64,000 bases of DNA, taken from positions 976,301 through 1,040,300 of the forward strand of contig OZ287704.1 in the NCBI GenBank assembly GCA_965649825.1, read 5' to 3'. Each line of letters starts with the position of its first letter. Positions within the stretch are counted from its first letter, which is position 1. Below are positions 1,696-62,051 of this stretch, piece after piece. Under the pieces are notes generated by a model. The model was not told where the DNA came from. It saw only the letters and a list, made by a program, of their open reading frames with translations, and searched no databases. Both the position numbers and the translations under genes were made by a program. The DNA comes from Penicillus capitatus. Its lineage: Eukaryota > Plantae > Chlorophyta.

Positions 1696-4600
1696 ATGAC
1701 GTTCGGAAGTAGCGGAGGACGCGAGTACTTCTACGACAACGAAACGATGCATCTCTTGGAGGATTTGCGCGGTTTCTATGGTGGGCGCGATTATTCGCAC
1801 ACATGCACCAAAGCGCTGAGACTTTTCAGTCTCCATCTCCAGCCCGTCGTCGACGTTTTCCTCCAGAAGGACTTGGGCGACTCCCGAACTTTTGTCGTCA
1901 AAGCGAAACCGTGGACAGAGAAGGATTTCGTATCGTTGCTTCCAAAACACGTTCGTTCGTTTACGAATGGCGATTGGCGATTGGCCGAGTACTTTAAACG
2001 TCATGCGAGTCAGTTGGACATGCTCACGTGCCGACGAGGTGGACCCGGATCGACATTGGTCGAAGCACTGCAGTACATATCGGTGCGTCTTTTGCGCATC
2101 GAATAGGAATTGAAACGACGCGGTGTACTCATATAGGTCATCCGTTCCCTCGTCAAGGTTTTTCCCGAGAGAATCGAAGCCGACGAGGGAGAAGACGTTT
2201 CGAAAGAGGAGATGGAAGAAGCAGAACAGAATTTGCGCAGAGGCAAGGCGGCGATTCACGATGTCTATCAGGAGATAAAACATGAGATTCTGGATGAACT
2301 TGATGCAGACAGAAGAGGATACGAGCGAGAGTCATTTAGTAAGACACCAATCGCCATTGATAGTTGCCTCAAAGGCCGAGATTCTGTACAGGACGCGAAG
2401 ACAGTAGAGACAGCACTGGCTTTCGAGAGTCCATGCGAAGTGTGCCCATGCGCCATGGGTCAGGTGACAGAAATGATCCGAGAAACGATGGGTTCTCGAG
2501 GCAATTATCTGATCGTCACAGGGATGAAGGTAGACAGTACATCACAAACCTGGATGCAAATGAAAGGCAATTGGGATGTGTAGGATACGGCAGTGGCGAT
2601 TTCGGCGAAAGGCGAGGACATTGGAATGCCGATCATGAAGGATCAATGGCTCGCGGATACGAACAGCAGCAGCGAAGCAAGCGAGATCGACCCCTTCATC
2701 GTTCGAGAACAGACAGTCCAGGTGCGTCGTCTCTTGTTTCTGACCGGATCTATTCTGACGTTAGCATTGAGTGGCAGAGTATGGGGATAGAAGAGATAGA
2801 TTTAGCAGCGGGTGGGATGCTCAGTCGCCACCCGAAAGGGACAGGGGTCCATTCTACAGCACCCATCCCAGTGATGGACAACGATACCACTCAGGTCCGA
2901 TTGTTGCGATGTTTTGTACCTTACTGAGTGAGATGGTAGGATATTGTGGTGAGTCGGGTGCTGGCAACAGGGGATGGGGTTCAGCAGCCAAGGGTTCAGA
3001 AAGGTTCAATGATCATGGTCCAGTAGATAGCCATTCGCCGAGAAGAGATGTGTCTTATGATGGAGGGATGAGCAGTGGCATGCATTTGCCGAGACGTCCA
3101 CCACGCAGTGGGGCGCCACAAGGACCTTCTCGATCCGCATCTGGAGGTGTTTCTCGAGATAATATGACCGGATTGCGCGCGACGAGTCGTGGGGAGCTAG
3201 GACGCTCATTCAGCGACGCAGATCGTGCCCGTTACGAGAGATCGTCGACTTGGGAATCTCGTGAAGATGAGCAGTTTAGGCAGAGAGGATCTGCGCCGGG
3301 AAGAAAGCTCTCGGAGCGGAGGGGTTTTGGAAAACCGTATGGCAACAGACAGGCGCTGGACAGATCTGCATCTTCCGAACATCATGAGACACTTGGAGAG
3401 ATATCTCGTGGACATGGATGGGCCACAACTGCAGCCACTGCACAAGATAGAAAGGGATGGGGAACTGCATCAAGGAGTACAAGAAGACATGGACAGGGAG
3501 GTTCAGTGAAGCAGGAGCCGAGCGAGAATCCGTGGGGAGGCCCCGTGAAACAGAAAGCTCCAAACGAGAATCCATGGGGAAGTGCGGCAACGCAGGAGCA
3601 GCCTGCCCAGAACCCATGGGGAGGAAGAAGTGCGACCCAGCAGGAGCCGCCGGCCCAGAACCCGTGGGGAGGCAGTGCAGCCAAGCAGCAGCCAGTAGCC
3701 CGACAGGAGCAGCCGGCCCAGAACCAGTGGGGAGGCAGTGCGACCCACCAGGAGCAGCCGGTCCAGAACCCATGGGGAGGCAGTGCAACCAAGCAGGAGC
3801 CGCCGGCCCGACAGGAGCTGTCGGCCCAAAACCCGTGGGGAGGCAGTGCAACCAAGCAGGAGCAGCCGGCCCAGAACCCGTGGGGAGGCAGTGCAACCAA
3901 GCAGGAGCAGCCGGCCCAGAACCCGTGGGGAGGCAGCGCAGCCAAGCAGGAGCCAGCAGCCCGACAGGAGCAGCCGGCCCAGAACCCGTGGGGAGGCAGT
4001 GCAGCTACGCAGGAGTCGCCGGTTCAGAATCCATGGGGAGGCAGTACAACCACACAGGATCCGCCAACCCGACAGGAGCAGCCGGCCCAGAATCCATGGG
4101 GAGGCGGTGCGGCAACGCAGGAGCAGCCGGCCCAAAATGTGTGGGGCCAGACGATGAGTGAAACGGGCGGTGATCAGGAAATGAAGGACGAGCCGCCGCC
4201 AAAGGCAATGCACTTGCCTGTCGTTAAAGAAACAGATCTTGACACACAGCCGCAAGCTAGCGAAGGATCATCTGAAAACAATGCTCAGAGAACAGGCTTT
4301 CCTGGTGTGCCTATCACCGCAGAACAGTCTTTATGCAATCCATCTGTGGACGAGAATGAAGAGACAACCGTTACTCAAGACAATCCATGGGCACAGAAGA
4401 CACAAGGACAATCTGAGAATCGGGACAATCAATGGACACCGTCATTCTCACCTCAGACAGTGTTTGCGAATCCATGGTGTTCCAAGGTAGAGTCTCCTGC
4501 TGTGTCGACACAGGCGATGTCGATCAGCTCAAGCATGCCAGATATGGCAGAAGAAGTTCAGAAGGACCCTCAAACCCAAGTCAACGATCAGCAGCCGTGG

Positions 4601-5116
4601 GGATCAAGCAACACCTCTACAGTGACAGGAAACATGGCAGGCACTTCGAGCCCATCAGACAAGCAGCCAGTCAATCCATGGTGTCCATCGGCTCAGTCAT
4701 CAACCTTTGGCAGCCAGTTCGGCAGGGTGAGCAGTGCACCCACAAATCTCAACGGCGCCAATCCTTGGAATTCGCAACCGCAGCAAGACACGTCGACATG
4801 GAATACAGCGGATGCAATGCGGAGATCCGATCCACCCACAGAGATCAGCAACTTTAATTCCACGTTGCCGTTCCACAGGACAGAAGATGAAAAGCACATC
4901 AGTGCCTCGCCAGAGACGGAGTCGAAAGACAGTAGTAGTGTCGCTTTCGGTACCCGGAGGCTCAAACCGCCTCCAGGTTTTGAAGGATCAGTGAGAAGAA
5001 CGGCATCGATGCCACCATCCAGTATCGGCCACAGTTCTGCCGAAGAACAACAGAACAGTCTACCAAGATTGGACATCATACAAGACAACGACGATTCGCG
5101 CCCTCCCGGGATTTGA
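1696..5116 (+). CDS. Multi-exon protein: unassigned ~200-aa N-terminal domain, R/D/G/S-rich linker, reiterated WG/GW repeats, C-terminal PPPGF/PPGI motifs
   Basis: ORFs 1696-2106, 2212-2340, 2391-2750 and 2771-5116 join in frame through short GT-AG introns (about 2083-2136, 2340-2390, 2529-2582, 2896-2940). About 13 tandem (N/Q)PWG(G/S) motifs lie at 3520-4150, with further GW/WG motifs elsewhere. Confidence 0.75.
3520..4150 (+). repeat. Coding tandem repeat (about 45- and 63-nt units) encoding QNPWGGSATKQEQPA-like units
   Basis: Repeated cagaacccgtggggaggcagtgcaaccaagcaggagcagccggcc and variants are visible directly. Confidence 0.95.
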
Positions 5117-6455: not shown

Positions 6456-8728
6456 ATGTGTGACATAAAGAGCAAAACTACTGAGTATGGCGAAGGAAGC
6501 TCCCCTTCGGCACCACCCATATCGGCCGCATTCGGAGGTCTGTCATCTCTGAGTACCACATGAACGCACGAACTTCTGCTTTTGGTAGAAACGGTGTACC
6601 CGTCATGCACTCCGTTGCCTCCAACGAACATGACACTATCAAGTACAGGAGAACGGTTGTCTTGATATCTGTCTCGAGAGTGATAAACAGGGGATAGTCA
6701 TTTGGTGAGAGATTTGTTGCGGAAAGCCGATGGAGATACTGTAAAAGTGGCGAGCTGGTTGGAAACTATGGGTGAAAGTGTGACGCCTGCTGAATTGCAG
6801 AGAGAACTGGAAATGTGTGATATGCATGCTCAAGGCGATGATATCGACACCATCGCCGCTCAGCTGGGAGCACCCGAAACGTACTTCTGTCCAGTTTCAT
6901 TTCATCTCTTTCGAGACCCTGTCCTTCTCCAAACTGGCCAAACGTAACCCTATATCGCATTGTGTAAGACGGCATATCAGCAAAGCGTGATGCAGATATG
7001 AGAGAAGTGTGATTCAACGTTGGTTATCCGAAGGCGGTTCCATCTGTCCCAATACTGGAATCGAGCTTCCAACTCCTGTCGTTCTTACACCGAACGTTGC
7101 TCTGCGCCATGCCATCGAAGAATGGGCGCAGAAATATGCAGAATGGATGCTGGTCTGTCCTCGTCTTGATCGACACCGTCGTTGCTGATGTGGTAGATGC
7201 AGGGACCCAATGGAAGAATATTGCCACTGCCTTCAGATAGGCACAACCGCAATCAGCCGCTGCTGTTCCAGCCAGCCATTACCGAAGGGGTCGAAGAAAT
7301 CCCGATAAGAATTCGAGAAGATGTCAACCACCACCGACGTGGTCGTGCACAGTATCGTCAACACCACATTGAAATGTGACGCACACACTCCACCATCGCA
7401 CTCTTCTCATGGTCGGTCTTCTGTAGGACTCAGTCTCAGTACGACCGCATTCGACGTTGTGTCTTCTTACTCTTTATGATCACCGTCGCGCATTTCGTTC
7501 TCTTTGTTATTACCCTGAATTCAGGGGACTGGAAGGTGAGGAGACAGAATCCCGATGACATGACAGGAGTGCAAACGTGGTTCTGTGATGCAGTTTGCCA
7601 AGATTGATGATAATCCGCTGATTGGATTTGAAGCCAATACGATTCGTCGAACAGGAGGAACGGATACCTATTTGATATCGGAAAGAAATGAATGGTGGAG
7701 AATGGCGACCTCTGCTCTGATGACGAGTGGCATCATTCATTTACAATGGGTGGTGTGTTGTCTCTGGACATGTGGACGATTTCTGGCGGCGCGCATGTCA
7801 TTCGTCTCACTCGGGCTGCTCTACGTGATCAGCTCCCTCTGCGGCGTCCTGCTTTCTGCCAATTTCTCTATCGTCTCTGAAGGAACGGGTGGATCTGCTG
7901 GCGCCTTCGGATTCATTGGTAAGGGAGCCGTGTCGATTGAAGCCGAAATGATGATCGTGATGTGACAGGAGCTGTTATGGTCGAAACGCTTGTTCATCGC
8001 AAGCACTACCGTCATCACTTCACTTCCATTTTCTTCCTGACCCTCATTGCCTCTGTCGGGATCCTGATGGGAACGACGCCGCTTGTGGATAACTGGACAA
8101 ATCTGGGCGGCTTTGTTGGCGGTTTCTCCATGGCCATGGCACTCAGATTGACGCATCGAGCTCTGCAAGGATCTGCTCCCTACATCGAAGGCTTCATGGT
8201 CGTCTTCCAAGTCTTCTGGTTTTTACTCGTCGGCTGTTTTGTCGTTGGCGGATGCATCGGCATCTTCCTCAACAAGGACAGTCGACAAGAGTGCAATTGG
8301 TGTCGGCAGCTCACTTGCGTCGACATGAATTGGTGGGATTGCGATGTCGCTGTCCTTCCTCCCGATGATTATCAGCTCAAATGCGAGTATGATATCAAAG
8401 GCAATCTGACAGCCACCATCCTCTGCCCATCGGTAACGCGCTCGCTCTCTTTTCACGCAGATTTCATTTTTGCGTACAGGGGAGAAATGAAACGGTACAG
8501 TTGGGAGATGCTTCGACAAAGGATCTCAACAGAAAACTCGATCAGGAATGTCAGAAGACGTGTGCCGATACCTCGACACATAACTCCAAGGACAAAAAGT
8601 CCCCCGTTTCAAGTCGCCCTCCTTCTATCCCGATCAACCGACCTCCGGACGCAAATCCAGTGAGATCCGAAGATGATGACGAAAACCAGCTGCGAGAAGG
8701 CAATACCATAATAGACACTCTAGAATAG
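6456..8728 (+). CDS. U-box domain fused to a rhomboid-family membrane domain lacking the catalytic His (predicted pseudoprotease)
   Basis: U-box: PETYFCPVSFHLFRDPVLLQTGQT|YERSVIQRWL...CPNTG...LTPNVALRHAIEEW. It continues in frame via GT-AG introns into rhomboid motifs DNPLIG, EWWR, GGSAGAFG, VDNWTNLGG and CNWCRQLTCV. Confidence 0.85.
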
Positions 8729-9484
8729 AGCAATGAGGTCCCATGATCCTACGGTTGAGGAGGATAGAGGTGTCCGACGTTCACTTGTTTGAACAAAGAT
8801 CGTGTTTCGGAAACATGTAAAACAGACAAGTAGATGGCACGTCATCTCAAGACGCATGCCCATGCTGTGGTCATCATTTGGACTCTGCCAACTCTATCAT
8901 GCTTCTGTAGACAGGCCAACTGCACGGCCGCTGCAGAAACGACATCACACATTGCGTTCCGAATGGTGTCTAGTCATTTTGCTGCTACTGCCGGAATGCA
9001 CTTCGCTGTGAACATCACACGCCATCGTTTATCACACTTATATCACACTTTTCATTTCTCACAGATCATACTGAGTTAGGAACATTTCTTAGGAGACGCA
9101 CATATTTTATAATGCTATCCAGTCCACATCGTTGCACAAGGCGACGCCGATCGACGATGTTGCAAGATCCGTCATTCTTCTGACGAACTTCTGTGGTGTT
9201 TCGCCGCAAGATGAGTCATCCCGCGTCGCTGTTATCCCACCGACTAAAACGAGGTATAGTGACGGGACGCGCAACGATCATTGTATGTTAGACCATCTGA
9301 CATTGTCTGCATTCCACGTCGCACGTGTATTGTTATTCCCATGCGTGACACAAAGAGAAACGAAGTGCATTCGCGTTCGCGTCGTGCCGTCCGTCCACAC
9401 GACAGGCAACACGACGCAAACGGCAACGGACATACGACGCTCGCGGCAACAGAAGAGTCCGGAGGACTCGGTGCGTTCGGTCGT

Positions 9485-12309
9485 ATGAGCATCGACGAAG
9501 ACGAGTTACTCAAATTGCTGAAAAACGAAGTGCCAGGCGAAGATTCGACCTCAGCTGCCGAGAATACCGATTCGCGATCGGTCGAAGACGATATGGCTCG
9601 CGAAAGCTCCGAGTGCTTTGCCGATTTGGAACGGGAACTCTCGGCTGCGCTGAACCGAAGTCAGGAAGAAGAGAATTCAGAACTGCGTCCTCTGACACCG
9701 GAAGATGTCAAAGATGTCTCGAGGACGACAACCCGAGAAGAGACCGTCTCTTCTGGCAGAACGGGAAAAGAATCATCGTCGGCAGATGAGAGCAGCGTGG
9801 AGGGAGAGACTTGTGAGGGCAAGAGAACCAAACGCAAGGCGGAAATGGGATCGAAATCGCCCATGAAGAAAACGAAGTATTATGAAACGAATAATACTGT
9901 ACGGAAGCCGGGATGGGCAGAAGACATGTTAAAAAATCGACCCTCTGTGATGATCTCACAGAAAAATCCAAATCCGTCGTCAACAAGAGCACAGCATCAG
10001 AAAGAACCATTTCATACGAAGAAGACCAGAATCGATCAGGCTTCGATGGAGCCTATTGTTGTTGGAAATGCCTATCACGGAGCACGGCGCAGTGCTCCTG
10101 TGTCCAGAAAGCCAATGATCGACGAGCGTTTTATGCCTCCGGGATGGTTGGACTGTCCAGGTCTCGAAGGCAAATGGGGTATCTTTCTATTCTCCAAGGT
10201 AGAGATGGCATGGATGGGCATTGTTCTCTATGAGAATGTGCATGCCTGTCCAGACGCCTCTGGGAGAGAGATGGAATCATCTGATACCACCCAGCAAGCG
10301 CTATACACCGCAGATGGTTTTGCAGACGGCGGCGAACCGAAGCCAACACGTAGGGCTCGTCTGGACTCTCTCCAGTCTTGCCTATCTGTGTTGTTATTTG
10401 TCAGATTGGTTTGGTCATTGATCTCACCAATTCTTCGCTCTACTACGATCCGTATGAATTCCAGAGGCACGGTGCTCAGTATCACAAGGTTGGATCGTCG
10501 TCCACCGTCTTCCCTTTGGCATGGATCTTGTGGAATGCAGATTCGTTGCCAGGGGCATGGCGCCACTCCAAGTCCGGAAGCTGTCAACGAGTTCTGGTGG
10601 ACGGTCTCCCAATTCGAACGGCGAAGAACGAATCGTTTCATACTGGTCCACTGCACACACGGCTTCAACAGAACAGGCATGTGTCATCTGTCGTGATGCA
10701 TGGTGTGAATAGCAGGGAGTGTTCAGGCTTCATGGTGGCACACTTTACCATGCGTTGGGCTGAGAAAGATACCATCAATGGCATCATCCGAACGTTTGCT
10801 GTACGTAGACCTCCTGGCATCTACAAGAACGAATACATCCAGGAGCTTCTAGAATACTATCACGAACCCAGGTACTCAGAACGCATTCCACGGACTCGTG
10901 GCCAGCGCATCTGGGCAGGAGTTCGAAACTCATCACTCCCTCCGTGCCCGAATGGAAAGGCCTTTCTCATGAGGAGAAAGAAGATGAAGATGCCACAAGG
11001 GAAACAAGCTCACGTTGCTCCGCCCTCCGCCCTCCTCTTTGAGTTTAAGAGGCTGTTGGTTTTGGTTAGGAATGATTGTGCACATGACATCCAGCGAAGC
11101 CATGACACCCGACGATCCAATTGGAGAACGCCTGTTGCCTCGAGAACAGGAGTGTCTGCAGTCTGAGATTCTGACTCTGATGCTGGGCTCTCAGAGGCAT
11201 TACAGTCGATTTCCAGGTGCTCAGCCAGTTTCCATGGATCGCAGTAACCTCGAGCTCCTCGCCAACAAACGGCATTGCCATTCTCAATCGATCTTGCTGT
11301 TGACAATGACTCTGAAGGTACTGGGTGACATACAAGGCAGATGGAACGCGTTACATGTTGTTGCTCATGAAGCATGGCGTGTACGTCATCAACAGAGGCT
11401 TTGAGTTTCAGCGTGTGGAAATGCGATTCCCTGCGGCTTTCAAAAACGATCATACCACCGTCAATCCTGGAATTCCACACCATATGACGCTATTGGATGG
11501 AGAGATGGTCATTGATCACGACCAGGAACGCGGCATCTATACGCGAAAATATCTGGTGTATGATCTGGTATTATATGAAGGTCAATCCTGGATGTCTGTG
11601 CCATGGAAGCAACGCTTTGCTCAGTTGCGCGAGATTGTCAATCTCCGCAATTCAGAAAAATCAATGATCGCAAAGAAACAATCGGCATTTGACTATCAGT
11701 ATCGCGATGAGCCCTTTGAGGTAGAGGCAAAGATGTTCTGGTGCATGGGTCAAGTCGAAGGAATCGTAAAAACCATACCAACGCTGAAGCATGAGTGTGA
11801 CGGGTTCATTTTCCAAGCCTATTGGGATAACTACAAAGTGGGCACACATGAGGAGCTTCTCAAATGGAAGTACGCCCACATGAACTCCGTCGATTTTCGC
11901 TACAGTTACGAAATCAATTCAGAGCGTGAGTCCCTCTACCGCCGCCATGCGCCGCCTTTGATTTCTGTGCCTTCCAGATGACGGGCAGGTTTTTCTGTTG
12001 AACAGGACAGAGGTATTGTGTGATGGGGTCAACGTGGATTTCCCGAATGAGGGGGATAAAGAGAGGTACAATGGAAAGATCATCGAGTGTGCCTATAATC
12101 AACAGACAAATCGATGGATCTTTCTGAGAGAAAGAGTGGACAAGAAGTCGCCAAATGCTTACAGTGTCTACGAGAAAGTGCTCAAAAGCATCAGGGACAA
12201 CATCACCCAGCAGGAGCTTGTGAATAGAATGCTAGATCTGTTTACCGAGTCTGCTATCTATGCTCAAGACAGAGAGAAATTGGCAAATTACAATCCTGTT
12301 AAAAATTAG
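9485..12309 (+). CDS. RNGTT: mRNA capping enzyme (RNA 5'-triphosphatase plus guanylyltransferase)
   Basis: Triphosphatase motifs PPGWLDCP, LVIDLTN and VHCTHGFNRTG. GTase motifs YKADGTRY, LLDGEM, DGFIF, LLKWK, KIIEC and RERVDK. TAG stop at 12307-12309. Confidence 0.95.
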
Positions 12310-21760: not shown

Positions 21761-24699
21761 TCATATGGAAATGATTCCGACGGATAATAAATCGAATTGA
21801 TCCACAGCGTGTGCCTGGATCCAAGCGTAGACTTGGCGATGTGTCGACTGCGATCCATCGACCATGACCCCGACCCTATCATCAAAAACATCTCCTTTCA
21901 GTATCTCCAACTGATATTCCCAGTCCGGCTTGCCGAAATTCAACGAGACCCTGGTATCGAAGATGAACTTCGGCACAAAAGGGTCGCGCACGATCCTCGC
22001 AAGACAATCATAAAAAAGCGCAGATGAAAAAGCAGCCCTAGGGCAGTAATGTATGTGCAAGTGAACTTCAAAAAGAATCAAAGAGCGCAAATCGTAGAGG
22101 GGTTCGATGAGTTCCAGAAGCCAAAGGACATCGTCAAAGCCGTTAATCTCCCAACTCAGAACCATCTTGCGAGTGGTTATCCCTTGACTGCGATCTCTTT
22201 GACCCATAGGCTTTCGTCTGAGCAGATAACTGCAAAGAGGAACCAATGGCAGTGAGGAGAAATTATCTCCGATCAAGAACAGAACAGGGTAAGACAGCAT
22301 AAGTAGAAGCTTCTCTTCCTGAAAAGCATTATTGAGTTTGTAGGGGCCTCTCAAAAAAGTGCGGAGGTCCACATGGATTCCTGATCTCCGTGATTCTGAC
22401 AGCAATGGGGAAGACACTGGGGCAACCAAGGTCTCATCAGTCACTTGCCTGGATCCCACACGCTGTTCCTCTCGTCGAAGCGAGTCACCCGTCGAGAGAC
22501 TCGCAGGAGTGATTTCAAAAATCACATTGAAATTGGATGAGGTAATGCGTCGGGGAACAACATGCTCGGTCGCTTCGGACGCCTCTCTTCGGGCTGCACT
22601 CCGAGCATGCGGGTCGTCTCCAATCATGCCAGCAATGCGCTATAGCAATGCATCTCGTCAAGGGGAGGGGGTATGGGGACATCATGCATTACCTGTGTCT
22701 GAGTGAGGTATACTAACCTTGTGTTGAGTCGAGTGAGTCGATCGGGAATGTGACAATGTGGTCGATTGGGCGAAATCTGATCCTCTGTCTGATGGAGGTC
22801 TCTCATATAACCGGTATCTCCAATTTCGACAGCGGCACTATCTCCGGAATCTCTTGCTGCTGGAGTCACTGACTTTTCATCCAGACTGAGCAAATGGTGT
22901 AAGAGTTCACGGCTCCATAGATCAATGGCACGAACAAGCACCATGAGTGAGTCCTCGGATGGATGCGAGAGCACGGGAAACGATCTCTGTTCGCTCATGT
23001 GTGTCGATGGAAAGCTCAAGGAAACGAAAGATAAAGCACCCAGACGACAGTCGACAGGTTTGGAGAGAATCAAAATGAGTCCCTTCTCGGGCAGGATCCG
23101 ATAATCCACGACATCGACCTCCGATACGGGATCCACCAACTTGAAAATTGCATAGTCCAGAAACAAGGCCAGAACTGGAAATCCTGCGTTACGTGCAGCG
23201 TGGATGAAAGGTTGCGGAGAATTCTGTTACCTAGCCAGAGCCAAAAGAGGCATGGGAGTCGAAAACAGCTACGCACGAAGGTTGTGGAGGAGTGTGTGGC
23301 TGTCAAGACGACAAAGATCGACAAGACCAACGCTTTGAACCACCCATTGCCGTAGAATAAGAGCCGCAATTTCTAGAAACACAGATCTCGATCGATCGAG
23401 ATCATCTTCGTGACGTCTGTTGTCTTACTGCCAGTCGAATGGATCTCAACGACCAATCGTATTTCTGAAGCACGGCAAAAATAGCAGTGATGGCAAAGAT
23501 CACGAAGAGCAGGAATCCAGATATAAAGACGTTGCTACGAAGAAGGGTTTGGATGGATGGCCGAGCTCGTCGATAAAACATGGATGAGTGATCGAGGAGG
23601 ACGTCACTCACAGAGAGACGTCCCATGTTCAATGTCTGACAGACGGAGTGCACGAGAACAACGAACAGCATGAGGACCAATACAATGCTGCGTGCGATTC
23701 GTAAATCTTCGACACTCACGTGCAGCGTCCTGGGGAGTTTTCTAGAAGCATATAAGATTTGGCTTGATTGGGAAGAGGGAGGGGTAAGGAGAGAGATACC
23801 TGTAGAGGAAAGGTGTGAGTCTGCACATGGTCAGTGTGAGAAAGGCGACGAGGACTTTAAAGAGATCTGATGTCGATCGACCGACAGTGTGTGTCCATCC
23901 GAGGACCTCCGCTAGTTCATCTTTCGTATGTCTCTCCATTCCGGCCACAAAGACAGTAACTGAAACAAAAAACAAGAAAGAGGCAGAAAGCAAACGCCCG
24001 GAATGATCGATGGTTTTGTCCCGTAGATAGCGACATCCGGCTTTGAAAAGGGAAAGCTCGGTTTTTGTAGGGAGCTTCGATTTGACGAGATGACAAACAA
24101 ACTGAGGATGATGCATGGCGATCTCCAACAGATGGGGGTAGCTCACGAGAGAGCCTTCGGCACCAATCTGCGCTAAGACGCGTTCCATGAGACATTCGAC
24201 AGTACGGTGCTCCATTTCACATCCACCCTCCACGAAGTTCTCCTGCAGACATGCGTCATCCACACGGCAGAGATGGAGTCTACGGGATTCTTACCCGGAA
24301 CATTGTCTTGATTTCGGGGATCGACAGATATCCTCTTGATGTAGCATCATAGCAATGAAAAATCATATAGAAACGAAACTGAAGATTATTGGTCTCGAAA
24401 GAGTAAACAAAATCCACCAAATCATCGACAGAGACAAATCCCGTGCATCGAATATCGATCAAAGCAAAAAGTCGCTCGGCAAATCGCAAACAACGCAATT
24501 GGAGCAAGTCCTTGACGTCGTGCACATCCAACAACTGCAGTCCGAGCCGATTCAAACGTCCGGTTAACAGATTCTGTGGCACAATGGTCAAAGAGCCTGT
24601 CAATTGAGAGCCGCGCCGTACTCTGATGTGGTCCGGAGTGGCATTGTGTTGCCAATAAGGAACGGAGAGATTCGGAGATGCTTCGCGTATCTGTTCCAT
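21761..24699 (-). CDS. RBOH: Respiratory burst oxidase (RBOH/NOX) homologue with EF-hands and degenerate heme/FAD/NADPH motifs (predicted pseudoenzyme)
   Basis: Domain order matches RBOH: EF-hands (FALIDIRCTGFVSVDDL; FHCYDATSRGYLSIPEI), ferric-reductase TM (LTLTMCR, VLVHSVC, ISGFLL, TATHS, WLWLGFP), FAD domain, then GPY, KMVLSW, FGKPDW and VGVMVDG. Exons join in frame with no premature stop found. Confidence 0.85.
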
Positions 24700-26909: not shown

Positions 26910-29900
26910 ATGCCAACGTTCTGTTGTCGACTATTCTGTAGCATGCATCTTTATCGATGCTATTATACTTTGCTCTGTCTGTTGCTATGGAGTCGTCTAA
27001 CCATCCTGACGTCATCGTCAGCCACCGAAGAAGGTACCTGTTCGAGTGAACTAGGTGCAGAGAACATCTCTGAGGGAGGGCAGCAGTACATCGTCCGCTT
27101 TCGCGAATACCGGAGGGCAGCACACTGGAGACGAGCACTGGAAGCTGTCTTAAGCGAAGATGGGTCGCAGTGGAAATGGGTCGAGCGACACAACGCAGCT
27201 GCCTCGTTTCCGACAGACTTCGGCGTCGTGCGATTCCAGACAGCCTCTGCAGAAACCGTGCAGGTAGATCTGAATCGACTTCTCAGTGGTCCTTGGTGGG
27301 ACGTCGGAGTCGTATAGGAACGCATACTCAAGCTGCCTTTTGTCAGAGACGTCCACCCAGACCGTCTGCTGCACCGGAGTCTGGCACACGTCGCGGAGGA
27401 AGAAGAGGGACATCGGGAGTGCAAGATTCAGAAGCCTCCAGGTCGATTCCGTACCCGTCCGACTTTCGGGATCGACAGCGAGGACGACGACTACACGTAT
27501 GGATCGGATTCCGAAGACCGGGCAGAGCTGAGGAGGAAGAGGATGCTCCTAAAAACCGGCCGCCGATCGGTGACGCGAATGCTGCACGCGGACGAGATCT
27601 GGAATCTGGGATACTCGGGCGAAAAGGTCAAGGTGGGCGTTTTCGACACCGGCATCCGAGCAAACCACCCCCACGTCAAGAACATCAAGGAACGCACGAA
27701 CTGGACCCACCAGAACACGCTGAGCGACGGATTGGGACATGGCTCGTTCGTGGCAGGCGTCATCGCCGGAATCTACGATGGATGTCTTGGATTCGCTCCG
27801 GACGTCGAGCTCTACACGTTCAAAGTGTTCACGGACGACCAGGTCTCCTACACGTCCTGGTTCATGGACGCCTTCAACTACGCCATCGTCTCGAAGATGC
27901 AGATCGTCAACCTGAGCATCGGCGGGCCGGACTTCCTCGATCAACCATTCGTCGAGAAGGCGAGATCGCTAGATGCAGTCGCAGTTCTCATGCCTTTTCA
28001 CTCCGCAGGTGCTTGAGGTCACATCGAGTGGGATCATCATGACGGCTGCCATCGGAAACGATGGACCTCTGTACGGGACGCTGAACAACCCGGCTGATCA
28101 GAACGATGTCATCGGAATCGGAGGTATCACCTTCGAGGATCGCATGGCGCGTTTCTCGTCGAGGGGGATGTCGACCTGGGAGCTGCCGATCGGCTACGGT
28201 CGCATCAAGCCGGATGTGCTGGCATACGCCCAGGACGTGAGCGGCTCGAGGATGCAGGACGGGTGCAAGAGCCTGTCGGGAACGAGCGTGGCGTCTCCCG
28301 TCGCCGCAGGGGCTGTGGCTCTGTTGGCCAGCACCGTTCCCGAAGGCGCTCGGTGGAGCCTGCTCAATCCGGCCTCGATGAAGCAGGCCCTGGTCGAGGG
28401 CGCCTCTCGGCTGGACGGCGAGACGGTCTACGTTCAGGGGGCCGGAAAGATCGACCTCGTCCGGTCCATGCAGATCCTGCAGAGCTACGAGCCCCGGGCC
28501 TCCCTCGTTCCCGGCAGCCTGGATCTGACCGACTGCCCGTACATGTGGCCCCTCTGCTCGCAGCCTCTCTATGCCGACGCCGTCCCGGTGATCGTCAACG
28601 CCACGATCCTGAACGGCATCAGCGTCACCGGCGTCCTAGAAGGGGTGCCGGAGTTCGCTCCCTCCAACAAGGCAGGAGAGCTCGTCTCCATGGACTTCGA
28701 GTACAGCGACGTCCTGTGGCCCTGGTCGGGCTACCTGGCCGTCTACGTCCGAGTCCAGTCCGCTGGACGATCCTACTCGGGCGTCGCCGAGGGAGAGATC
28801 CGCTTCACCGTCGTCGCTCCCCCGGTCGAGGGCGAGAGGGGGGAGAGGAAGTCCACTGTCCGAGTGCCGTTCAAGGCGAGGATCGTTCCGAAGCCTCCCC
28901 GAGAGAAGAGGGTGCTCTGGGACCAGTTCCACTCCGTCAAGTATCCGCCCGCCTACTTCCCGCGAGACAACCTCGACGTGCAGAGAGACATCTTGGACTG
29001 GCACGGAGACCACCCGCACACCAACTTCCACGACATGTTCGACCACCTGCGAGACAGGGGTTACTACCTGGAGGTCCTGGGTTCTCCCTACACCTGCTTC
29101 AACGCATCACAGGTCCTGCCTGCCGGACGGCGTCCGGCACACTGCTGACTCCATTCGCTGTAGTACGGGGCGCTGATGATCGTCGACTCCGAAGACGTCT
29201 TCTATCCGGAGGAGGTCGCAAAACTGGCTGCGGATGTGAGGGAAGAGGGACTCGGCGTCATCGTCTTCGCGGAGTGGTACAATGCCAAGACGGCCACGGA
29301 CTTCCGCTTCTTCGATGACAACACGCGCAGCTGGTGGACTCCCGCCACGGGAGGCGGCAACATCCCTGGCCTGAACGACCTGCTTGGCCAGTTTGGGATT
29401 GCCTTCGGGGACGCCGTCCTCAAAGGGACCCAGTCGATCGGCGGCCAGCGCGGGGTGAAGTACTCCTCTGGGGCCAACATTGCAAGGCTGCCTGCTGGCA
29501 GCTTTGCCCACCACTTCTCTCTGGAGGAAACGTCCAAGGAGACCAGCTCCTTCGGCGACTACTACACTCTGGGCCTGACCGCCCATGGGAACGGCAGACT
29601 GGCCGTCTACGGAGATTCCAACTGCCTGGACTCCAGTTACCAGTCGGATCACTGCTTCGAGCTGCTCGATGCGATGCTGGACTTTGTGAACGAGAACGAA
29701 GACAACAGCCTTCTGCAGAGTCTGACAGGCGAGGATCACATACTGAAGGCATCTCTGGACGCAGAGGATCTTCCGCAGCCGATCGAAGACGTCAACTTCA
29801 CAGAGTTCTCTTTTGTCATGAGCCATCCATTACAGTGCTACATGAACCATCCCATCATGGAGATCAACGACGCGCCAGTGAACCGGTCCGACATGGAAAT

Positions 29901-37005: not shown

Positions 37006-38823
37006 GTGGGGAGTTTCAATAACTTAAGCGATTCAGGGTCTGGCCGCATCCTGGCAGGCGAGGCACACAGTGCTGGAGCGTGGGCATTGATGTCTATGGT
37101 CAACAGCGTGACAGTTGTCTCGCGATCAGAGCAGAACCTCGGCCATATGGAGATCTGCAACTTCAATCAACTCACACCCAAGGCACTGGATCTCGTCCGA
37201 GACATTGCATCTGGTTTCGAGAGCGGATTATCACCGGAACGTGGAGAAGAGGGATTCGGTGGCACGTATTTCGTTTCGAACAAACATCGACAAAAGGTTG
37301 CGATTTTTAAACCGTGCGATGAGGAGCCTTTGGCACCTTGCAACCCCAAAGGCTTTGTTGGTCGATCTTTGGGAGACCCGGGTCTGAAGCCGACGGTACG
37401 TGTTGGTGAAGCAGCTTTGAGAGAGGTGGCGGCTTACTTGTTGGATCGTCATCAGTTTGCCAAGGTGCCAACGACTCTGCTGATGCGTGCCAGTCATCCT
37501 GCTTTTAATTATGTACCTGGAGTAGATTCGTCTGGATCCTTGAACGTGTCGCTCTTCTCTGAAGGGGTGTCGTCACAGTTAGATGCTGCAAGACTGCCTA
37601 TGAAACTTGGCTCAGTTCAGGAATTTGTTACGCATCTCTGTGACACAACAGAGATGGGCACATCGAAGTTCACGACAGCCGATGTGCAACGTATCGCCAT
37701 TTTGGACATTCGTTTGTACAACACAGATCGCCACGCTGGCAACATTCTTGTACGAAAAGTCGATGCCAGTCACTCAGCAGAGCCCTTCAAAGAGACAGGC
37801 TTTGAGCTCATCCCGATCGACCATGGCTTTTGCCTTCCCGAAGCTTTGGAGCCTCCGTACTTTGAATGGCAACATTGGTCACAGGCACGATTGCCTCTGG
37901 GGCAGGAAGAGCTGGAATACATTGCCTCTATTGATATCGAAGCCGAGAAGGCGATGTTACGTAAAGAGTTGCCAGTGTTGCGCGAAGAGTCTCTCAGAAC
38001 GATGGAAGTGTCTACTACTCTTCTGAAGAAATGTGCAGCCGCTGGGCTGTCTCTTCATGAAATTGCTGAAATCATGACACGTCCATTGGTCGGAATGGAC
38101 GAAGAGAAATCCGACCTCGAAAAAATCTGTCTCGAAACGAAGGAAGAAGTCATGTCGGCTGCCGTGACTGGATTAGAAATAAGTTGGATATCATCATCAT
38201 CTGACTGCGAGTCCGATGAGTTAGAAAGCAACGAAACGACAACAGCCACTCCAACACGCATAGATGAACTGCTGTTTTGCATAGATGATTTGAAAGAGCT
38301 GGAATCGTCTATCATGATGAATGCCACCGGATCGAACGGACTGTCTACCGATGCAGCAACGGAAACAGTCGTGGCAATGGTTGAGCAGGGACTCGTCGAG
38401 GAGTGCTTACTGGAACAACTGTCCTTGGAGTGTGAGGGGCACCCAATTGCTGAGCCAATTGTGATCAACGTGGGATTAAGGAAAGGCCAAAGATCAATGT
38501 CAATGGCTCTCCCCTCTTCCACTGTCTGTTGCCGACTGCCTAAACGTGGTTATGGTCAACACACCCGACCTGAACATCGTCCTTCTTCTGGGAGTCCCAA
38601 GCAAGGAGAGACAAAAGTTACCTATCCACCTCTCGTTCACGGATCAGCTCCTGGAAGTTCTGATGACGTCTTTCGCTACATGAGCTCAGATCAGTGGAAG
38701 TGCTTCATGGAGGTGCTGTGTGATAAAATTGACGATGGAATAAAGCAGGGAAAATGGGTTTCACATGACATCAAGACCCGTTCCATGTCTATGAATTTGG
38801 GCATTTCCTGTCCCCGTTTCTGA
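37006..38823 (+). CDS. PI4KG: Type II phosphatidylinositol 4-kinase gamma (PI4K-gamma), no N-terminal UBL domain; true start may be ATG 37090
   Basis: GFGGTYF, IFKPCDEEP, EAALREVAAYLLD, KLGSVQEFV, LDIRLYNTDRHAGNIL and PIDHGFCLPE in one 605-aa ORF. Confidence 0.93.
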   Translation: MGSFNNLSDSGSGRILAGEAHSAGAWALMSMVNSVTVVSRSEQNLGHMEICNFNQLTPKALDLVRDIASGFESGLSPERGEEGFGGTYFVSNKHRQKVAIFKPCDEEPLAPCNPKGFVGRSLGDPGLKPTVRVGEAALREVAAYLLDRHQFAKVPTTLLMRASHPAFNYVPGVDSSGSLNVSLFSEGVSSQLDAARLPMKLGSVQEFVTHLCDTTEMGTSKFTTADVQRIAILDIRLYNTDRHAGNILVRKVDASHSAEPFKETGFELIPIDHGFCLPEALEPPYFEWQHWSQARLPLGQEELEYIASIDIEAEKAMLRKELPVLREESLRTMEVSTTLLKKCAAAGLSLHEIAEIMTRPLVGMDEEKSDLEKICLETKEEVMSAAVTGLEISWISSSSDCESDELESNETTTATPTRIDELLFCIDDLKELESSIMMNATGSNGLSTDAATETVVAMVEQGLVEECLLEQLSLECEGHPIAEPIVINVGLRKGQRSMSMALPSSTVCCRLPKRGYGQHTRPEHRPSSGSPKQGETKVTYPPLVHGSAPGSSDDVFRYMSSDQWKCFMEVLCDKIDDGIKQGKWVSHDIKTRSMSMNLGISCPRF

Positions 38824-40787: not shown

Positions 40788-41756
40788 ATGGCACCTGAAG
40801 CTGCTGCAGAGGGATACTATATGACACCGTGCTGCGGTGAGGCAGATATGTCTGGATATTCCAGAACGTCTTCGCCGGATCCAAACGTGTTCTACGACGG
40901 TCACGAAGATAAGCGCGCATACACCGACGGTCGCTGCGCAGGCTCGCAGTATCATTCATGGCCGACACCGGCAGGCTTTACAGCTTATCCGTCAAACGAC
41001 GCAAAGACATACGCACCGTCGCCTTACAGTATGCCGCCACATGGAGTTCCACCAATGCCAGTGCACATGCCATCTGTCCCCTACGGACACGGCGCCGCCG
41101 GACAAATGGTAGCACCACAACCGCCAATGTTTGGCGTGCAAGCTCCACGGACTCCAACACGCACTCGTGCAGACATTACTGATACGTCCTCATCAAATTG
41201 CACTCCGAGAGACCACTATTCGACGGCTATGGATCGACCATCTCCCGTGAAGAGACATGCCCGCAAGCATGATGCTGGACCTCGATTCCCAGTCGTCAAA
41301 ATTCCGGAGGGATTGAAGAAGCAAGGAGGACAACCATCACCAGCGACGTGGCTGAACATGAGAGGCTTCCCACTCAGAGCTGGCAAGCCTGACTGCAAGC
41401 ATTACACTACAAAGGGATGGTGCGCATATGGAACACTCTGCAAATTCAACCACCCGGATAACATGCCAGCGGCAACGATGCCCTATGGGATGGTGCCCTG
41501 CGTTCCTGGATCCCAACCGATGGTAATGAATGGACCCTGGATGGGACTTCACTACCAGTGGAACGGACCATGGAACCAGCATCATCATCAGTCATCGCCT
41601 GCCGTCCCGCATGCCTATCCCCCATACATGTGCCATCCCTGCCATTCCGGCCCTTGCAGTACAGAGTCTGGACATACTGCGATTTCGCATTCGGATGGAA
41701 GAGAGCATGAAAAGGTCACAGTCGACACGGAAACCAGTGCCATGATGTATCATTGA
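40788..41756 (+). CDS. CCCH-type zinc-finger protein (single C-x8-C-x5-C-x3-H finger) in a Pro/Met/Tyr-rich low-complexity context
   Basis: FPLRAGKPDCKHYTTKGWCAYGTLCKFNHP, the plant C3H RNA-binding finger type. Confidence 0.85.
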   Translation: MAPEAAAEGYYMTPCCGEADMSGYSRTSSPDPNVFYDGHEDKRAYTDGRCAGSQYHSWPTPAGFTAYPSNDAKTYAPSPYSMPPHGVPPMPVHMPSVPYGHGAAGQMVAPQPPMFGVQAPRTPTRTRADITDTSSSNCTPRDHYSTAMDRPSPVKRHARKHDAGPRFPVVKIPEGLKKQGGQPSPATWLNMRGFPLRAGKPDCKHYTTKGWCAYGTLCKFNHPDNMPAATMPYGMVPCVPGSQPMVMNGPWMGLHYQWNGPWNQHHHQSSPAVPHAYPPYMCHPCHSGPCSTESGHTAISHSDGREHEKVTVDTETSAMMYH

Positions 41757-61329: not shown

Positions 61330-61764
61330 GTTTTTTTTTCGTGGGGATGAAAAAAGTTTAAAAGAAATAAAAAGTTTTCTTTTGTTTTTCTGGGCGCGGT
61401 GTCTTGACTACTGCTGCTCTGCTGTTTTCTTTTTTGTGACTTTTGGAGCGTCTCTACATTCGTTTTCGTCATCGTGCACGGGACTGCATTGCCTATTCCT
61501 AATGTGTGCACGTTTATTGCGATCTGGATGTTACGAGGGACCAGACCTAGCAACTAACGTTCTGTTTTGTTTTTGTTGTTTCAGCTGCTGCATAGCTGTT
61601 GTTTTGTGCTGGCGACATTTATAGATGGGAGATCGACTCTTATGTTTGTGCATTTCAGTAATAATTGCGGTCGGACATGTTTTTGAGCTGCGGCGGCTCA
61701 TATGGCGGCGGCACATGCTTTTACTGTGTGGCGGGGAGTACATTTGAGTGGTCATTTCTGTTTT

Positions 61765-62051
61765 GTCCGGATCTGTGGAGGTGGATGTCGAGGTGTCCGG
61801 ATCTGTGGAGGTGGATGTCGAGGTGTCCGGATCTGTGGAGGTGGATGTCGAGGTGTCCGGATCTGTGGAGGTGGATGTCGAGGTGTCCGGATCTGTGGAG
61901 GTGGATGTCGAGGTGTCCGGATCTGTGGAGGTGGATGTCGAGGTGTCCGGATCTGTGGAGGTGGATGTCGAGGTGTCCGGATCTGTGGAGGTGGATGTCG
62001 AGGTGTCCGGATCTGTGGAGGTGGATGTCGAGGTGTCCGGATCTGTGGAGG
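61765..62051. repeat. Perfect 30-bp minisatellite (gtccggatctgtggaggtggatgtcgaggt), 9 full copies plus 17 bp
   Basis: Identical units are visible directly. On the minus strand it could encode (DPDTSTSTST)n. Confidence 0.97.

What the first reader, a model, noticed from the sequence alone, without database searches (positions are those of the whole stretch)
21761..24699. Intact RBOH/NOX that has lost the inner heme and FAD/NADPH motifs but kept the outer-heme histidines
Seen, aligned by eye to RBOH/NOX2. TM3: FHK…(13 aa)…H reads ARS…H, so the H101 equivalent is Arg (23690-23692) and the H115 equivalent is kept (23648-23650). TM5: FWYSHH…H reads GWFKAL…H, so the H209 equivalent is Ala (23331-23333) and the H222 equivalent is kept (23292-23294). 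FAD motif HPFSITS reads RSFPVLS; GPYG reads GPYK; NADPH motif GxGIGATP reads GDNFSSLP; FYCG reads MVDG; the terminal Phe is absent. Established: H101/H209 ligate the cytosol-side heme and H115/H222 the outer heme. The loss is coherent and the reading frame and EF-hands are intact. Inference: a repurposed Ca2+-responsive single-heme pseudo-oxidase (regulatory subunit, or heme/O2/redox sensor) rather than random decay.
Basis: partly seen in the sequence, partly recalled or inferred. Interest (0 to 1): 0.82.

Follow-up and report, generated by a model that had tools for sequence, protein, structure and literature searches.

The report
Conserved single-haem pseudo-NADPH-oxidase in algae
A siphonous green alga carries an intact, strongly selected relative of NADPH oxidase that has lost every motif needed to take electrons from NADPH but keeps the two histidines of the outer haem, so it is an old, repurposed 'dead' oxidase and not a decaying gene.

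Summary
The minus-strand gene at 24699-21761 has 7 exons and 6 short introns and encodes an 874-aa protein with the EF-hand / six-helix / dehydrogenase layout of NOX5, DUOX and RBOH. In a 52-sequence alignment almost every canonical relative aligned at each site has four haem histidines, HPF(T/S), GP(F/Y)G, GxGIGxTP, CG and a C-terminal Phe. This protein has Arg and Ala at the inner-haem positions, RSFP, GPYK, GDNFSSLP and DG, and keeps only the outer pair (H298, H398).

It is not a pseudogene. Intact orthologues occur in at least 8 Bryopsidales lineages, including Caulerpa lentillifera. dN/dS against a 91%-identical orthologue is 0.10. Exons carry no indels while introns do.

Within the membrane domain, only the outer-leaflet halves stay conserved (20/76 versus 7/76 invariant columns). 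Canonical NOX controls are symmetric.

The Arg at the first haem position matches the YedZ/STEAP single-haem signature. The nearest sequence and fold relatives are NOX/DUOX, so I read this as convergence.

Haem content, activity and expression remain untested.

The parts
21761..24699 (-). Whole gene from ATG to stop: 7 exons (24699-24622, 24573-24295, 24242-23800, 23741-23429, 23372-23231, 23183-22693, 22639-21761), product 874 aa
   Evidence: Splice model, revised. It is collinear with Caulerpa lentillifera g2883.t1 and with orthologous loci L002, L003, L005 and L007.
24574..24621 (-). Intron 1: 48 nt, GT-AG, in frame and stop-free in this window, so it mimics coding sequence
   Evidence: It contains a TAG in the L002 orthologue, is absent from the Caulerpa protein, and has an intron at the same place in L005 and L007.
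24243..24294 (-). Intron 2 (52 nt). The other introns are 23799-23742 (58), 23428-23373 (56), 23230-23184 (47) and 22692-22640 (53).
   Evidence: Introns are 82.7% identical to L002 with 20 gap positions, whereas exons are 93.9% identical with no gaps.
24111..24525 (-). EF-hand-like N-terminal domain (residues 43-163). The degenerate loops are DIRCTGFVSVDD (24456-24421) and DATSRGYLSIPE (24348-24313).
   Evidence: Pfam EF-hand_6 and EF-hand_7 score below their cut-offs. There are sequence matches to CBL2 and NOX5 EF domains. AF2 pLDDT is about 90. No PROSITE EF-loop match.
23134..24002 (-). Six-helix ferric-reductase-type membrane domain (residues 200-435)
   Evidence: Hydropathy; AF2 helices; profile alignment to DUOX1, NOX5 and NOX2; Foldseek top hits DUOX1, NOX5 and NOX2. 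Pfam Ferric_reduct is not detected even at E<=1.
23690..23692 (-). R284, replacing the inner-haem TM3 histidine (NOX2 H101)
   Evidence: Arg in all 7 lineages where TM3 is available. This is the same substitution that defines YedZ/STEAP (PMC3591440).
23648..23650 (-). H298, the retained outer-haem TM3 histidine (NOX2 H115). Q302 (23638-23636) replaces the non-coordinating H119.
23331..23333 (-). A385, replacing the inner-haem TM5 histidine (NOX2 H209). The position is variable in the clade (A, S, V or P). The adjacent K384 is K or R in all members.
23292..23294 (-). H398, the retained outer-haem TM5 histidine (NOX2 H222), within the clade-specific invariant motif HSxxTFxR
22864..23133 (-). FAD-lobe-like beta-barrel (residues 436-525). 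RSFP (22986-22975) stands in place of HPF(T/S).
   Evidence: Pfam FAD_binding_8 E=0.008, below its cut-off; alignment to NOX5 and DUOX1; motif columns.
22370..22863 (-). Insert predicted to be disordered (residues 526-672). It carries two near-invariant clade-specific motifs: PDRLTRLNTRLVYL (22746-22705) and NFNVIFEITPASLS (22534-22493).
   Evidence: pLDDT about 35; invariant columns in A2; no Pfam match; no protein outside the clade matches this stretch.
21764..22369 (-). NADPH-lobe-like Rossmann domain (residues 673-874). It has GPYK (22348-22337), GDNFSSLP (22270-22247) and DG (21859-21854), and no terminal Phe.
   Evidence: Matches the csNOX5 dehydrogenase domain (5o0x, E 1.6e-5; Foldseek TMt 0.80). 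Motif columns. It has the lowest dN/dS of any region, 0.027.

Best explanation
This is a functional, non-catalytic descendant of an EF-hand NADPH oxidase, a pseudo-oxidase that arose before the radiation of the siphonous green algae (Bryopsidales) and has been kept since.

Shown:
- It keeps the whole NOX architecture.
- Every element of the cytosolic electron-input chain is destroyed in all members: the NADPH loop, the CG motif, the FAD HPFT motif, the terminal aromatic residue and the inner-haem His pair.
- The outer-leaflet half of the membrane domain, with its two haem-ligating histidines, remains under constraint.
- The whole protein is under strong purifying selection.

Inferred:
- It binds one b-type haem at the extracytosolic site (my estimate about 0.55-0.6).
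- It cannot move electrons from NADPH to O2 on its own (about 0.9).
- It works through protein-protein contacts of its constrained pseudo-dehydrogenase lobe, pseudo-EF domain and conserved linker motifs. The most likely form is a partner or modulator of a canonical algal NOX, or a membrane signalling or sensing module (about 0.3 for the NOX-partner version specifically).
- Regulation by direct Ca2+ binding is unlikely.
For: Homology and fold:
- phmmer to human NOX5, E 2.7e-7.
- Clade profile to NOX5 (2e-11), DUOX1 (1.5e-10), NOX2 and the csNOX5 dehydrogenase domain.
- AF2 model with pLDDT 74.6 and pTM 0.69, and structured domains at about 90.
- Foldseek top hits DUOX1 (7e-23), NOX5 and NOX2.

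Motif loss:
- Shared by all clade members, against 40+ canonical relatives.

Selection:
- Against L002, exons are 93.9% identical with 0 indels over 2673 nt. Introns are 82.7% identical with 20 gap positions. Flanks are about 90% identical with indels.
- dN/dS is 0.096 (bootstrap 0.061-0.136) with dS 0.21. By region: NADPH-like lobe 0.027, membrane domain 0.085.
- Full-length intact ORFs with the same intron positions occur in L002, L003 and L007. L005 has fewer introns, and the Caulerpa protein is collinear.
- At least 8 lineages at 24-62% pairwise identity.
- The clade is monophyletic in 100 of 100 bootstraps.

Outer site kept:
- H298 and H398 are invariant.
- Invariant columns number 20/76 in the outer-leaflet halves against 7/76 in the inner halves (Fisher p=0.0099).
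- Four canonical NOX control groups are symmetric (p 0.5-1.0).

Precedent for the partner model:
- NOX5 oligomerises through its dehydrogenase domain, and inactive variants act as dominant negatives (PMC7394750).
Against: - No biochemical, spectroscopic or transcript evidence exists for any member. All related contigs I could reach are genomic and unspliced.
- Two invariant histidines among about 22% invariant columns is only moderate statistical support for haem binding.
- The residues that make the outer haem an O2-reducing site are not kept, so the purpose of a retained haem is unclear.
- The AF2 model rests on an alignment dominated by canonical NOX, so it is partly circular as evidence of fold.
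- I could not show that a canonical NOX coexists in the same organism. The only support is a statement that Rboh genes are present and expanded in Bryopsidales (PMC11441479).
- dN/dS comes from one close pair, which could be paralogues or homeologues. That would still indicate constraint.
Confidence: 0.6

Rival explanations
1. It is an active STEAP/MsrQ-like single-haem transmembrane electron conduit. The former inner-haem site, now lined by invariant R284 and K/R384, binds a flavin, quinone or other redox cofactor. Electrons come from another protein, not from the protein's own dead dehydrogenase domain. They reach an extracellular acceptor such as a metal ion or a partner enzyme, and not O2.
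For: - Arg at the first TM3 haem position with the outer pair retained is the signature of YedZ/STEAP (PMC3591440).
- In STEAP4 the lost inner-haem site became the flavin site (PMC6194020).
- R284 is invariant in 7 lineages.
- The canonical O2-site residues are replaced, as in metal reductases.
- The outer face is strongly conserved, with HSxxTFxR and NM motifs.
Against: - The inner-leaflet halves of the helices are the least conserved part of the membrane domain (7/76 invariant). That is not expected for a cofactor pocket.
- The TM5 position is A, S, V or P, not the STEAP Gln.
- No donor domain is present.
- No STEAP or MsrQ appears among PDB profile hits at E<=0.01 or in the Foldseek top 50.
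Confidence: 0.17
2. It is a haem-free scaffold. No cofactor is bound. The two histidines and the outer-face motifs are kept for folding, for binding a metal or ligand other than haem, or for contact with a luminal or extracellular partner.
For: - The loss of every other cofactor motif shows that redox function is dispensable.
- NOX5 can persist in cells in a haem-free form (PMC7394750).
- The O2-site residues are lost.
Against: - Both partners of one bis-His pair are invariant across about 30% identity, while both partners of the other pair are lost.
- The conservation asymmetry coincides with the outer-haem pocket on TM3-TM6.
- Unpaired polar histidines in a membrane core are usually replaced when they have no function.
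Confidence: 0.18
3. It is an ordinary decaying pseudogene of an RBOH/NOX gene.
For: Catalytic motifs are lost wholesale. Pfam domain scores fall below threshold.
Against: - dN/dS is 0.10, and there are no indels in 2.7 kb of exon while introns and flanks have them.
- There are intact ORFs, and splice sites remain canonical GT-AG or the tolerated GC-AG, in at least 5 full-length orthologues separated by up to about 65-70% protein divergence.
- New invariant motifs have been gained.
Confidence: 0.01
4. It is a still-active NADPH oxidase whose motifs only appear lost because of misalignment or a wrong gene model.
For: The protein is very divergent (about 17% identity to canonical NOX), so alignment error is conceivable. 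One in-frame intron was indeed mis-read at first.
Against: - Three independent alignments (phmmer, profile HMM, MAFFT) agree.
- The only invariant histidines in the membrane domain are H298 and H398.
- The motif regions lie inside exons, well away from splice junctions.
- No Gly-rich loop or HPF-like motif exists anywhere in the C-terminal half.
Confidence: 0.02

Closest known systems
EF-hand NADPH oxidases (human NOX5 and DUOX1, plant RBOH, unclassified chlorophyte NOX)
   Same: Same domain order: EF-hand domain, six-helix ferric-reductase domain, FAD-lobe barrel, NADPH-lobe Rossmann fold. They are the best sequence and fold matches. The outer-haem His pair, the TM4 (T/S)G motif, the GPY core and the HxxxxxxN spacing on TM3 are retained. 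In the tree the clade nests among algal and plant-type EF-hand NOX.
   Different: The inner-haem His pair is lost (R and A/S/V/P). The H119 equivalent is Q or E, and the R54 equivalent is mostly N. HPFT becomes (R/Q/K)xxP. GxGIGxTP is degenerate. CG becomes DG. There is no terminal Phe. The EF loops are non-canonical. Two new invariant linker motifs are present. The branch is very long, and Pfam Ferric_reduct is undetectable.
STEAP1-4 and bacterial YedZ/MsrQ (single-haem ferric-reductase-domain proteins)
   Same: Only the outer (H115/H222-type) His pair is present, and Arg occupies the position of the first TM3 haem histidine (PMC3591440). According to PMC6194020, STEAPs are so far the only described eukaryotic single-haem transmembrane electron carriers.
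   Different: It is not related to them beyond superfamily level, since its nearest relatives are NOX/DUOX. The TM5 position is not Gln. It has no F420-type oxidoreductase domain and instead carries a dead FNR-type dehydrogenase domain and an EF-hand domain. The resemblance is therefore convergent, and whether a flavin occupies the inner site is unknown.
Inactive NOX5 variants acting as dominant negatives
   Same: They are catalytically dead NOX polypeptides that still associate through the dehydrogenase domain and modulate active enzyme (PMC7394750). In the algal protein the pseudo-NADPH lobe is the most constrained part (omega 0.027).
   Different: Those are splice or point variants of an active gene within one species. 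This is a separate gene fixed and conserved across an algal order, and no interaction has been shown.

Membership tests
NADPH oxidase (NOX/RBOH), criteria of Massari et al. 2022 (PMC9421330) | Six transmembrane helices followed by an FNR-type dehydrogenase domain | tested here: met
   Hydropathy, AF2 helices and strands, Foldseek hits to DUOX1, NOX5, NOX2 and the csNOX5 dehydrogenase domain.
NADPH oxidase (NOX/RBOH), criteria of Massari et al. 2022 (PMC9421330) | Four iron-coordinating histidines for two haems | tested here: not met
   Only 2 of 4 are present: R284, H298, A385, H398. The same holds in all clade members.
NADPH oxidase (NOX/RBOH), criteria of Massari et al. 2022 (PMC9421330) | Extra non-coordinating His on TM3 at the O2 site (NOX2 H119) | tested here: not met
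   Gln302 in the window protein; Q or E across the clade.
NADPH oxidase (NOX/RBOH), criteria of Massari et al. 2022 (PMC9421330) | (T/S)G motif in TM4 | tested here: met
   S341-G342 in the window protein; TG in the other members.
NADPH oxidase (NOX/RBOH), criteria of Massari et al. 2022 (PMC9421330) | (V/I/L)xGP(F/Y)G strand motif | tested here: not met
   The sequence is LRGPYK. GPY is invariant, but the final Gly is K, S or R in the clade.
NADPH oxidase (NOX/RBOH), criteria of Massari et al. 2022 (PMC9421330) | FAD motif HPF(T/S); NADPH motifs GxGIGxTP and (F/Y)CGP; C-terminal aromatic residue | tested here: not met
   RSFP, GDNFSSLP, VDGS and a C-terminus ending ...GIISI. The Gly-loop positions vary among orthologues.
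NADPH oxidase (NOX/RBOH), criteria of Massari et al. 2022 (PMC9421330) | Pfam Ferric_reduct, FAD_binding_8 and NAD_binding_6 above gathering score | tested here: not met
   Ferric_reduct is absent at E<=1 in 6 of 6 members. FAD_binding_8 scores 16.7 bits against a cut-off of 22. NAD_binding_6 gives only weak matches in 3 of 6 members.
NADPH oxidase (NOX/RBOH), criteria of Massari et al. 2022 (PMC9421330) | NADPH-dependent superoxide or H2O2 production | not testable with these tools
   Needs expression and assay.
STEAP / YedZ(MsrQ) single-haem ferric-reductase domain (Zhang et al. 2013, PMC3591440) | First TM3 haem His replaced by a conserved Arg, with the outer His pair kept | tested here: met
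   R284 is invariant in 7 lineages, and H298 and H398 are invariant.
STEAP / YedZ(MsrQ) single-haem ferric-reductase domain (Zhang et al. 2013, PMC3591440) | TM5 inner His replaced by a conserved Gln (STEAP2-4) or retained (YedZ, STEAP1) | tested here: not met
   A, S, V or P at this position.
STEAP / YedZ(MsrQ) single-haem ferric-reductase domain (Zhang et al. 2013, PMC3591440) | Closest sequence and structure relatives are STEAP or MsrQ; N-terminal F420-type oxidoreductase domain or stand-alone ferric-reductase domain | tested here: not met
   PDB profile hits and Foldseek hits are NOX/DUOX, and no STEAP or MsrQ is listed. The architecture is EF domain + ferric-reductase domain + FNR-like domain.
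STEAP / YedZ(MsrQ) single-haem ferric-reductase domain (Zhang et al. 2013, PMC3591440) | Flavin bound at the former inner-haem site; one haem per subunit | not testable with these tools
   Needs purified protein or cofactor-aware structure work.
Ca2+-binding EF-hand domain | Canonical 12-residue loop with acidic or polar ligands at positions 1, 3, 5 and 12 (PROSITE PS00018); Pfam gathering score | tested here: not met
   0 PROSITE matches in 6 of 6 clade members, against 1-3 in 8 of 9 canonical relatives. Pfam EF-hand_7 scores 22.2 against a cut-off of 30, and EF-hand_6 scores 24.3 against 25. The helix-loop-helix fold is still predicted with pLDDT about 90 and matches CBL and NCS-1.
Unitary pseudogene | Frame disruptions or neutral evolution (dN/dS about 1, indels in former exons) | tested here: not met
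   The ORF is intact after splicing. dN/dS is 0.096, and there are 0 exon indels against 20 intron gap positions.

The most novel reading that the evidence does not exclude
A second, independent origin in eukaryotes of a single-haem transmembrane redox or sensor module. A di-haem NADPH oxidase would have been converted, inside the NOX lineage, into a STEAP-like one-haem protein. Its extracytosolic haem would then work in one of two ways. Either it is fed in trans through a re-purposed inner pocket (R284, K/R384). Or it acts as a ligand or redox sensor (O2, NO, H2O2, haem) that signals through the constrained pseudo-dehydrogenase lobe and the conserved linker motifs, possibly tied to the wound or ROS biology of giant single-celled (coenocytic) algae.
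Probability: 0.2. Interest if true: 0.85.

Novelty: new variant of a known kind. Interest (0 to 1): 0.62.

Why it matters
NOX enzymes are treated as an invariant machine. Four haem histidines plus the FAD and NADPH motifs are used to define the family (PMC9421330). I found no description of a conserved, selected NOX-derived pseudoenzyme in the searchable literature.

This clade is a natural dissection of the enzyme. Evolution removed the entire electron-input half and the O2-site residues, yet kept the outer-haem ligands, the outer face and the overall fold across an algal order whose two sampled branches now share only about 30-35% identity in this protein.

It gives three things:
1. A test case for what the outer haem and the NOX scaffold do when no electrons arrive from NADPH.
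2. A convergent replay of the di-haem to single-haem transition inferred for STEAP/YedZ, including the same His-to-Arg change.
3. A caution for genome surveys that count 'Rboh' copies in Bryopsidales as ROS producers.

It is also a candidate regulator of ROS signalling in giant coenocytic cells.

Tried and rejected
- The word-indexed homologue search returned only the Caulerpa protein, both with the single sequence and with the six-sequence profile. The exhaustive representative search was needed to find the other lineages, which appear as ORF fragments.
- The first gene model (890 aa) was rejected once the L002 orthologue showed a stop inside what is really a 48-nt in-frame intron.
- My first junction finder failed because tblastn matches ran through stop codons. 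I rewrote it.
I used A3 instead, which is dominated by canonical NOX, so the model is partly circular.
- Model coordinates are not exposed, so I could not measure His-His or Arg-pocket geometry.
- I tried to show a canonical NOX in the same organism. There is none in the window. The closest canonical relatives (P0008, P0014, P0021) come from other sequencing runs of unknown taxon.
- The sister group of the clade is unresolved because of the long branch (P0032 41%, P0008 25% bootstrap).
- No transcript-derived (spliced) contig of any clade member was found.
- The idea that the membrane domain is a true STEAP/MsrQ homologue was rejected.
- The conserved insert has no Pfam match.
Full report
**Observation**

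The region 21761-24699 holds a minus-strand eukaryotic gene broken into reading-frame blocks. Removing five short GT-AG introns gave an 890-aa product. Comparison with a closely related locus then exposed a sixth intron of 48 nt (24621-24574). It is in frame and stop-free here, carries a stop in the relative, and is missing from the Caulerpa protein. The final model has 7 exons and 874 aa.

The spacings of 14 and 13 residues are the canonical ones for the two bis-His pairs.

**What it is related to**

- Pfam sees only sub-threshold EF-hand and FAD_binding_8 matches, and no Ferric_reduct or NAD_binding_6 in the window protein.
- phmmer against PDB sequences finds human NOX5 (E 2.7e-7) and calcineurin-B-like EF proteins.
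- A profile of six orthologues finds NOX5 (2e-11), DUOX1 (1.5e-10), NOX2 and the csNOX5 dehydrogenase domain (1.6e-5). Its residue-level alignment to DUOX1 puts R284 on the inner TM3 histidine, H298 on the outer one, Q302 on the O2-site histidine, A385 on the first H of 'THH', and H398 on the outer TM5 histidine.
- An AlphaFold2 model (pLDDT 74.6, pTM 0.69, ordered domains about 90, residues 537-668 disordered) matches DUOX1, NOX5, NOX2, the csNOX5 dehydrogenase domain (TMt 0.80) and SpNOX by Foldseek. The input alignment is mostly canonical NOX, so I treat the model as support for the fold only.

**Motif test against 40+ canonical relatives**

I aligned the protein with 51 proteins from the exhaustive search. 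The comparison column by column:

| Site | Canonical sequences | This protein |
|---|---|---|
| TM3 | H-x13-H-x3-H | R, H, Q |
| TM5 | H(H)-x12-H | (K)A, H |
| FAD motif | EWHPF(T/S)xxS | QRSFPVLS |
| Strand motif | DGP(F/Y)G | RGPYK |
| NADPH loop | GxGIGxTP | GDNFSSLP |
| CG motif | (F/Y)CGP | VDGS |
| C-terminus | ...(K)E(N)F | ...GIISI |

Almost every canonical sequence aligned at a site shows the canonical motif; the rare exceptions are single divergent sequences.

Two further points come from the same alignment:
- The O2-site Arg of TM2 (NOX2 R54) is Arg here but Asn in the four more distant orthologues.
- The TM4 (T/S)G motif and the GPY core are kept.

**Not a pseudogene**

The window comes from an ENA metagenome assembly (ERZ25074695, a 290-kb contig). 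A second assembly (ERZ26696514, a 1.6-Mb contig; L002) carries the same gene at 90.8% nucleotide identity over 4.9 kb. Against L002:

| Region | Identity | Gaps |
|---|---|---|
| Introns | 82.7% | 20 gap positions |
| Flanks | about 90% | present |

Nei-Gojobori dN/dS is 0.096 (bootstrap 0.061-0.136) with dS 0.21. By region it is 0.15 for the EF region, 0.085 for the membrane domain, 0.17 for the FAD-like lobe, 0.11 for the insert and 0.027 for the NADPH-like lobe.

Full-length intact genes were reconstructed from three further loci: L003, L005 and L007. L003 and L007 share the window's intron positions; L005 has fewer introns. With Caulerpa lentillifera g2883.t1 and partial loci (L006, and L008/L009, the latter from a coral metagenome), there are at least 8 distinct lineages at 24-62% pairwise identity.

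The clade is monophyletic in 100 of 100 bootstraps. It sits on a very long branch among algal and plant-type EF-hand NOX, and its sister group is unresolved.

A neighbouring PI4-kinase gene places the organism in Bryopsidales. Its best named hits are EukProt models whose identifiers follow the Caulerpa lentillifera naming style (54%), then Bryopsis sp. KO-2023 (46%), then core chlorophytes. An Ostreobium-like endolith is plausible but not shown.

**What is kept**

Across the six full-length sequences, R284, H298 and H398 are invariant. They are also present in L006. The H209-equivalent position varies (A, S, V or P), and the preceding residue is always K or R.

I split each helix at its midpoint according to topology. 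The outer-leaflet halves have 20/76 invariant columns and the inner halves 7/76 (Fisher p=0.0099; Mann-Whitney p=0.005). The effect lies in TM3-TM6, the helices that cradle the haems. Four groups of five canonical NOX of comparable divergence are symmetric: 16/18, 17/14, 37/32 and 13/14, with p from 0.5 to 1.0. Constraint has therefore been relaxed specifically around the former inner-haem site and kept around the outer one.

New invariant motifs appear at the outer end of TM5 (HSxxTFxR). Two more lie in the disordered insert between the two dehydrogenase lobes (PDRLTRLNTRLVYL and NFNVIFEI(T/S)PAS). Neither matches anything outside the clade or in Pfam.

**EF-hands**

The domain is recognisably an EF-hand pair and is confidently folded in the model. 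However, no loop in any clade member satisfies the PROSITE pattern, while 8 of 9 canonical relatives have 1-3 matching loops.
- Loop 1 is DIRCTGFVSVDD here. Position 3 is R, Q or N, and position 12 is D, Q or A across the clade.
- Loop 2 is DATSRGYLSIPE. Position 3 is T, L, V or F, and position 5 is mostly Arg.

Direct Ca2+ regulation is therefore unlikely.

**Mechanism**

Shown: the protein cannot bind NADPH or FAD in the canonical way, and it lacks the inner haem. Electrons therefore cannot pass from NADPH to an outer haem within this polypeptide.

Inferred: one b-haem is still held by H298 and H398 (my estimate about 0.55-0.6). The canonical O2-reducing residues are gone, so superoxide production at that site is improbable even if electrons arrived.

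The most constrained part is the pseudo-NADPH lobe. In NOX5 the dehydrogenase domain mediates oligomerisation, and inactive variants act as dominant negatives (PMC7394750). That makes a partner or modulator role for a canonical NOX the most economical model. Bryopsidales are reported to have Rboh genes (PMC11441479), but I could not show co-occurrence in this organism.

**The STEAP parallel**

[quoted passage not shown] In STEAP4 the lost inner-haem site became the flavin site. STEAPs are described as the only eukaryotic single-haem transmembrane electron carriers (PMC6194020).

The algal clade has the same His-to-Arg change and the same retained pair, yet it descends from NOX. No STEAP or MsrQ appears among the sequence or fold matches. 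The resemblance is convergent.

An active, trans-fed STEAP-like conduit is the main rival (about 0.17). Against it stand the poor conservation of the inner halves of the helices and the variable TM5 position.

**Verdict**

I rate it a new variant of a known kind. I found no description of such a clade in the searchable literature. Haem stoichiometry, activity, partners and expression need bench work.

Noticed in passing
window 26919-29871 (+) and 55120-52167 (-): A 2.95-kb inverted segmental duplication at 98.6% identity (41 substitutions, 1 indel). It encodes a site-1-protease-like subtilase (Pfam Peptidase_S8, MBTPS1_3rd, MBTPS1_4th). Its GC content is about 0.60 against about 0.49 for the rest of the window. 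The left copy lacks one A (at 27989, against 54049 in the right copy). That breaks the 659-aa ORF seen in the right copy, so one copy may be a young pseudogene or an assembly error.
   Followed up: partly
window 24574-24621 (-): A 48-nt intron that is in frame and free of stops, so it reads through as 16 extra residues. It was only unmasked by a stop codon in the orthologue. Short in-frame introns of this kind could inflate ORF-based protein predictions throughout this genome.
   Followed up: yes
L002 intron 2; L007 introns 2 and 4: Orthologous introns use GC-AG donors (GCAAGA, GCAAAA, GCAAAC) where the window has GT-AG. L005 (Caulerpa-like) lacks the two 3' introns altogether.
   Followed up: partly
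window 22705-22746 and 22493-22534 (-): Two near-invariant motifs (PDRLTRLNTRLVYL and NFNVIFEITPASLS) sit in a segment predicted to be disordered. They have no match outside the clade. RLNT fits a basophilic kinase site (hydrophobic-x-R-x-x-T). Their function is unknown.
   Followed up: partly
window 21764-22369 (-): The NADPH-like lobe, although stripped of its nucleotide-binding motifs, has the lowest dN/dS in the gene (0.027). No explanation I considered fully accounts for this.
   Followed up: partly
window 2771-5116 (+), 59507-61624 (+), 61531-62145 (-): Long low-complexity tandem-repeat ORFs: QNPWGGSA(T/A)(K/Q)QE repeats, a Pro/Arg-rich repeat of about 105 nt, and TDPDTSTSTS repeats. They may be repeat-protein genes or simple satellite sequence that happens to stay open.
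   Followed up: no
window 7962-8663, 9281-11981, 37006-38823, 40788-41756, 42754-44091: Neighbouring genes are ordinary eukaryotic housekeeping types: rhomboid, mRNA capping enzyme, PI4-kinase type II/gamma, a CCCH zinc-finger protein and a WW-domain protein. There is no redox-related neighbour and no second NOX in the 64 kb.
   Followed up: partly
protein searches: The annotated proteome of Bryopsis sp. KO-2023 is in the database, since it gave a PI4K hit. It produced no full-length member of the pseudo-NOX clade. The gene may be lost or unannotated in that lineage.
   Followed up: no
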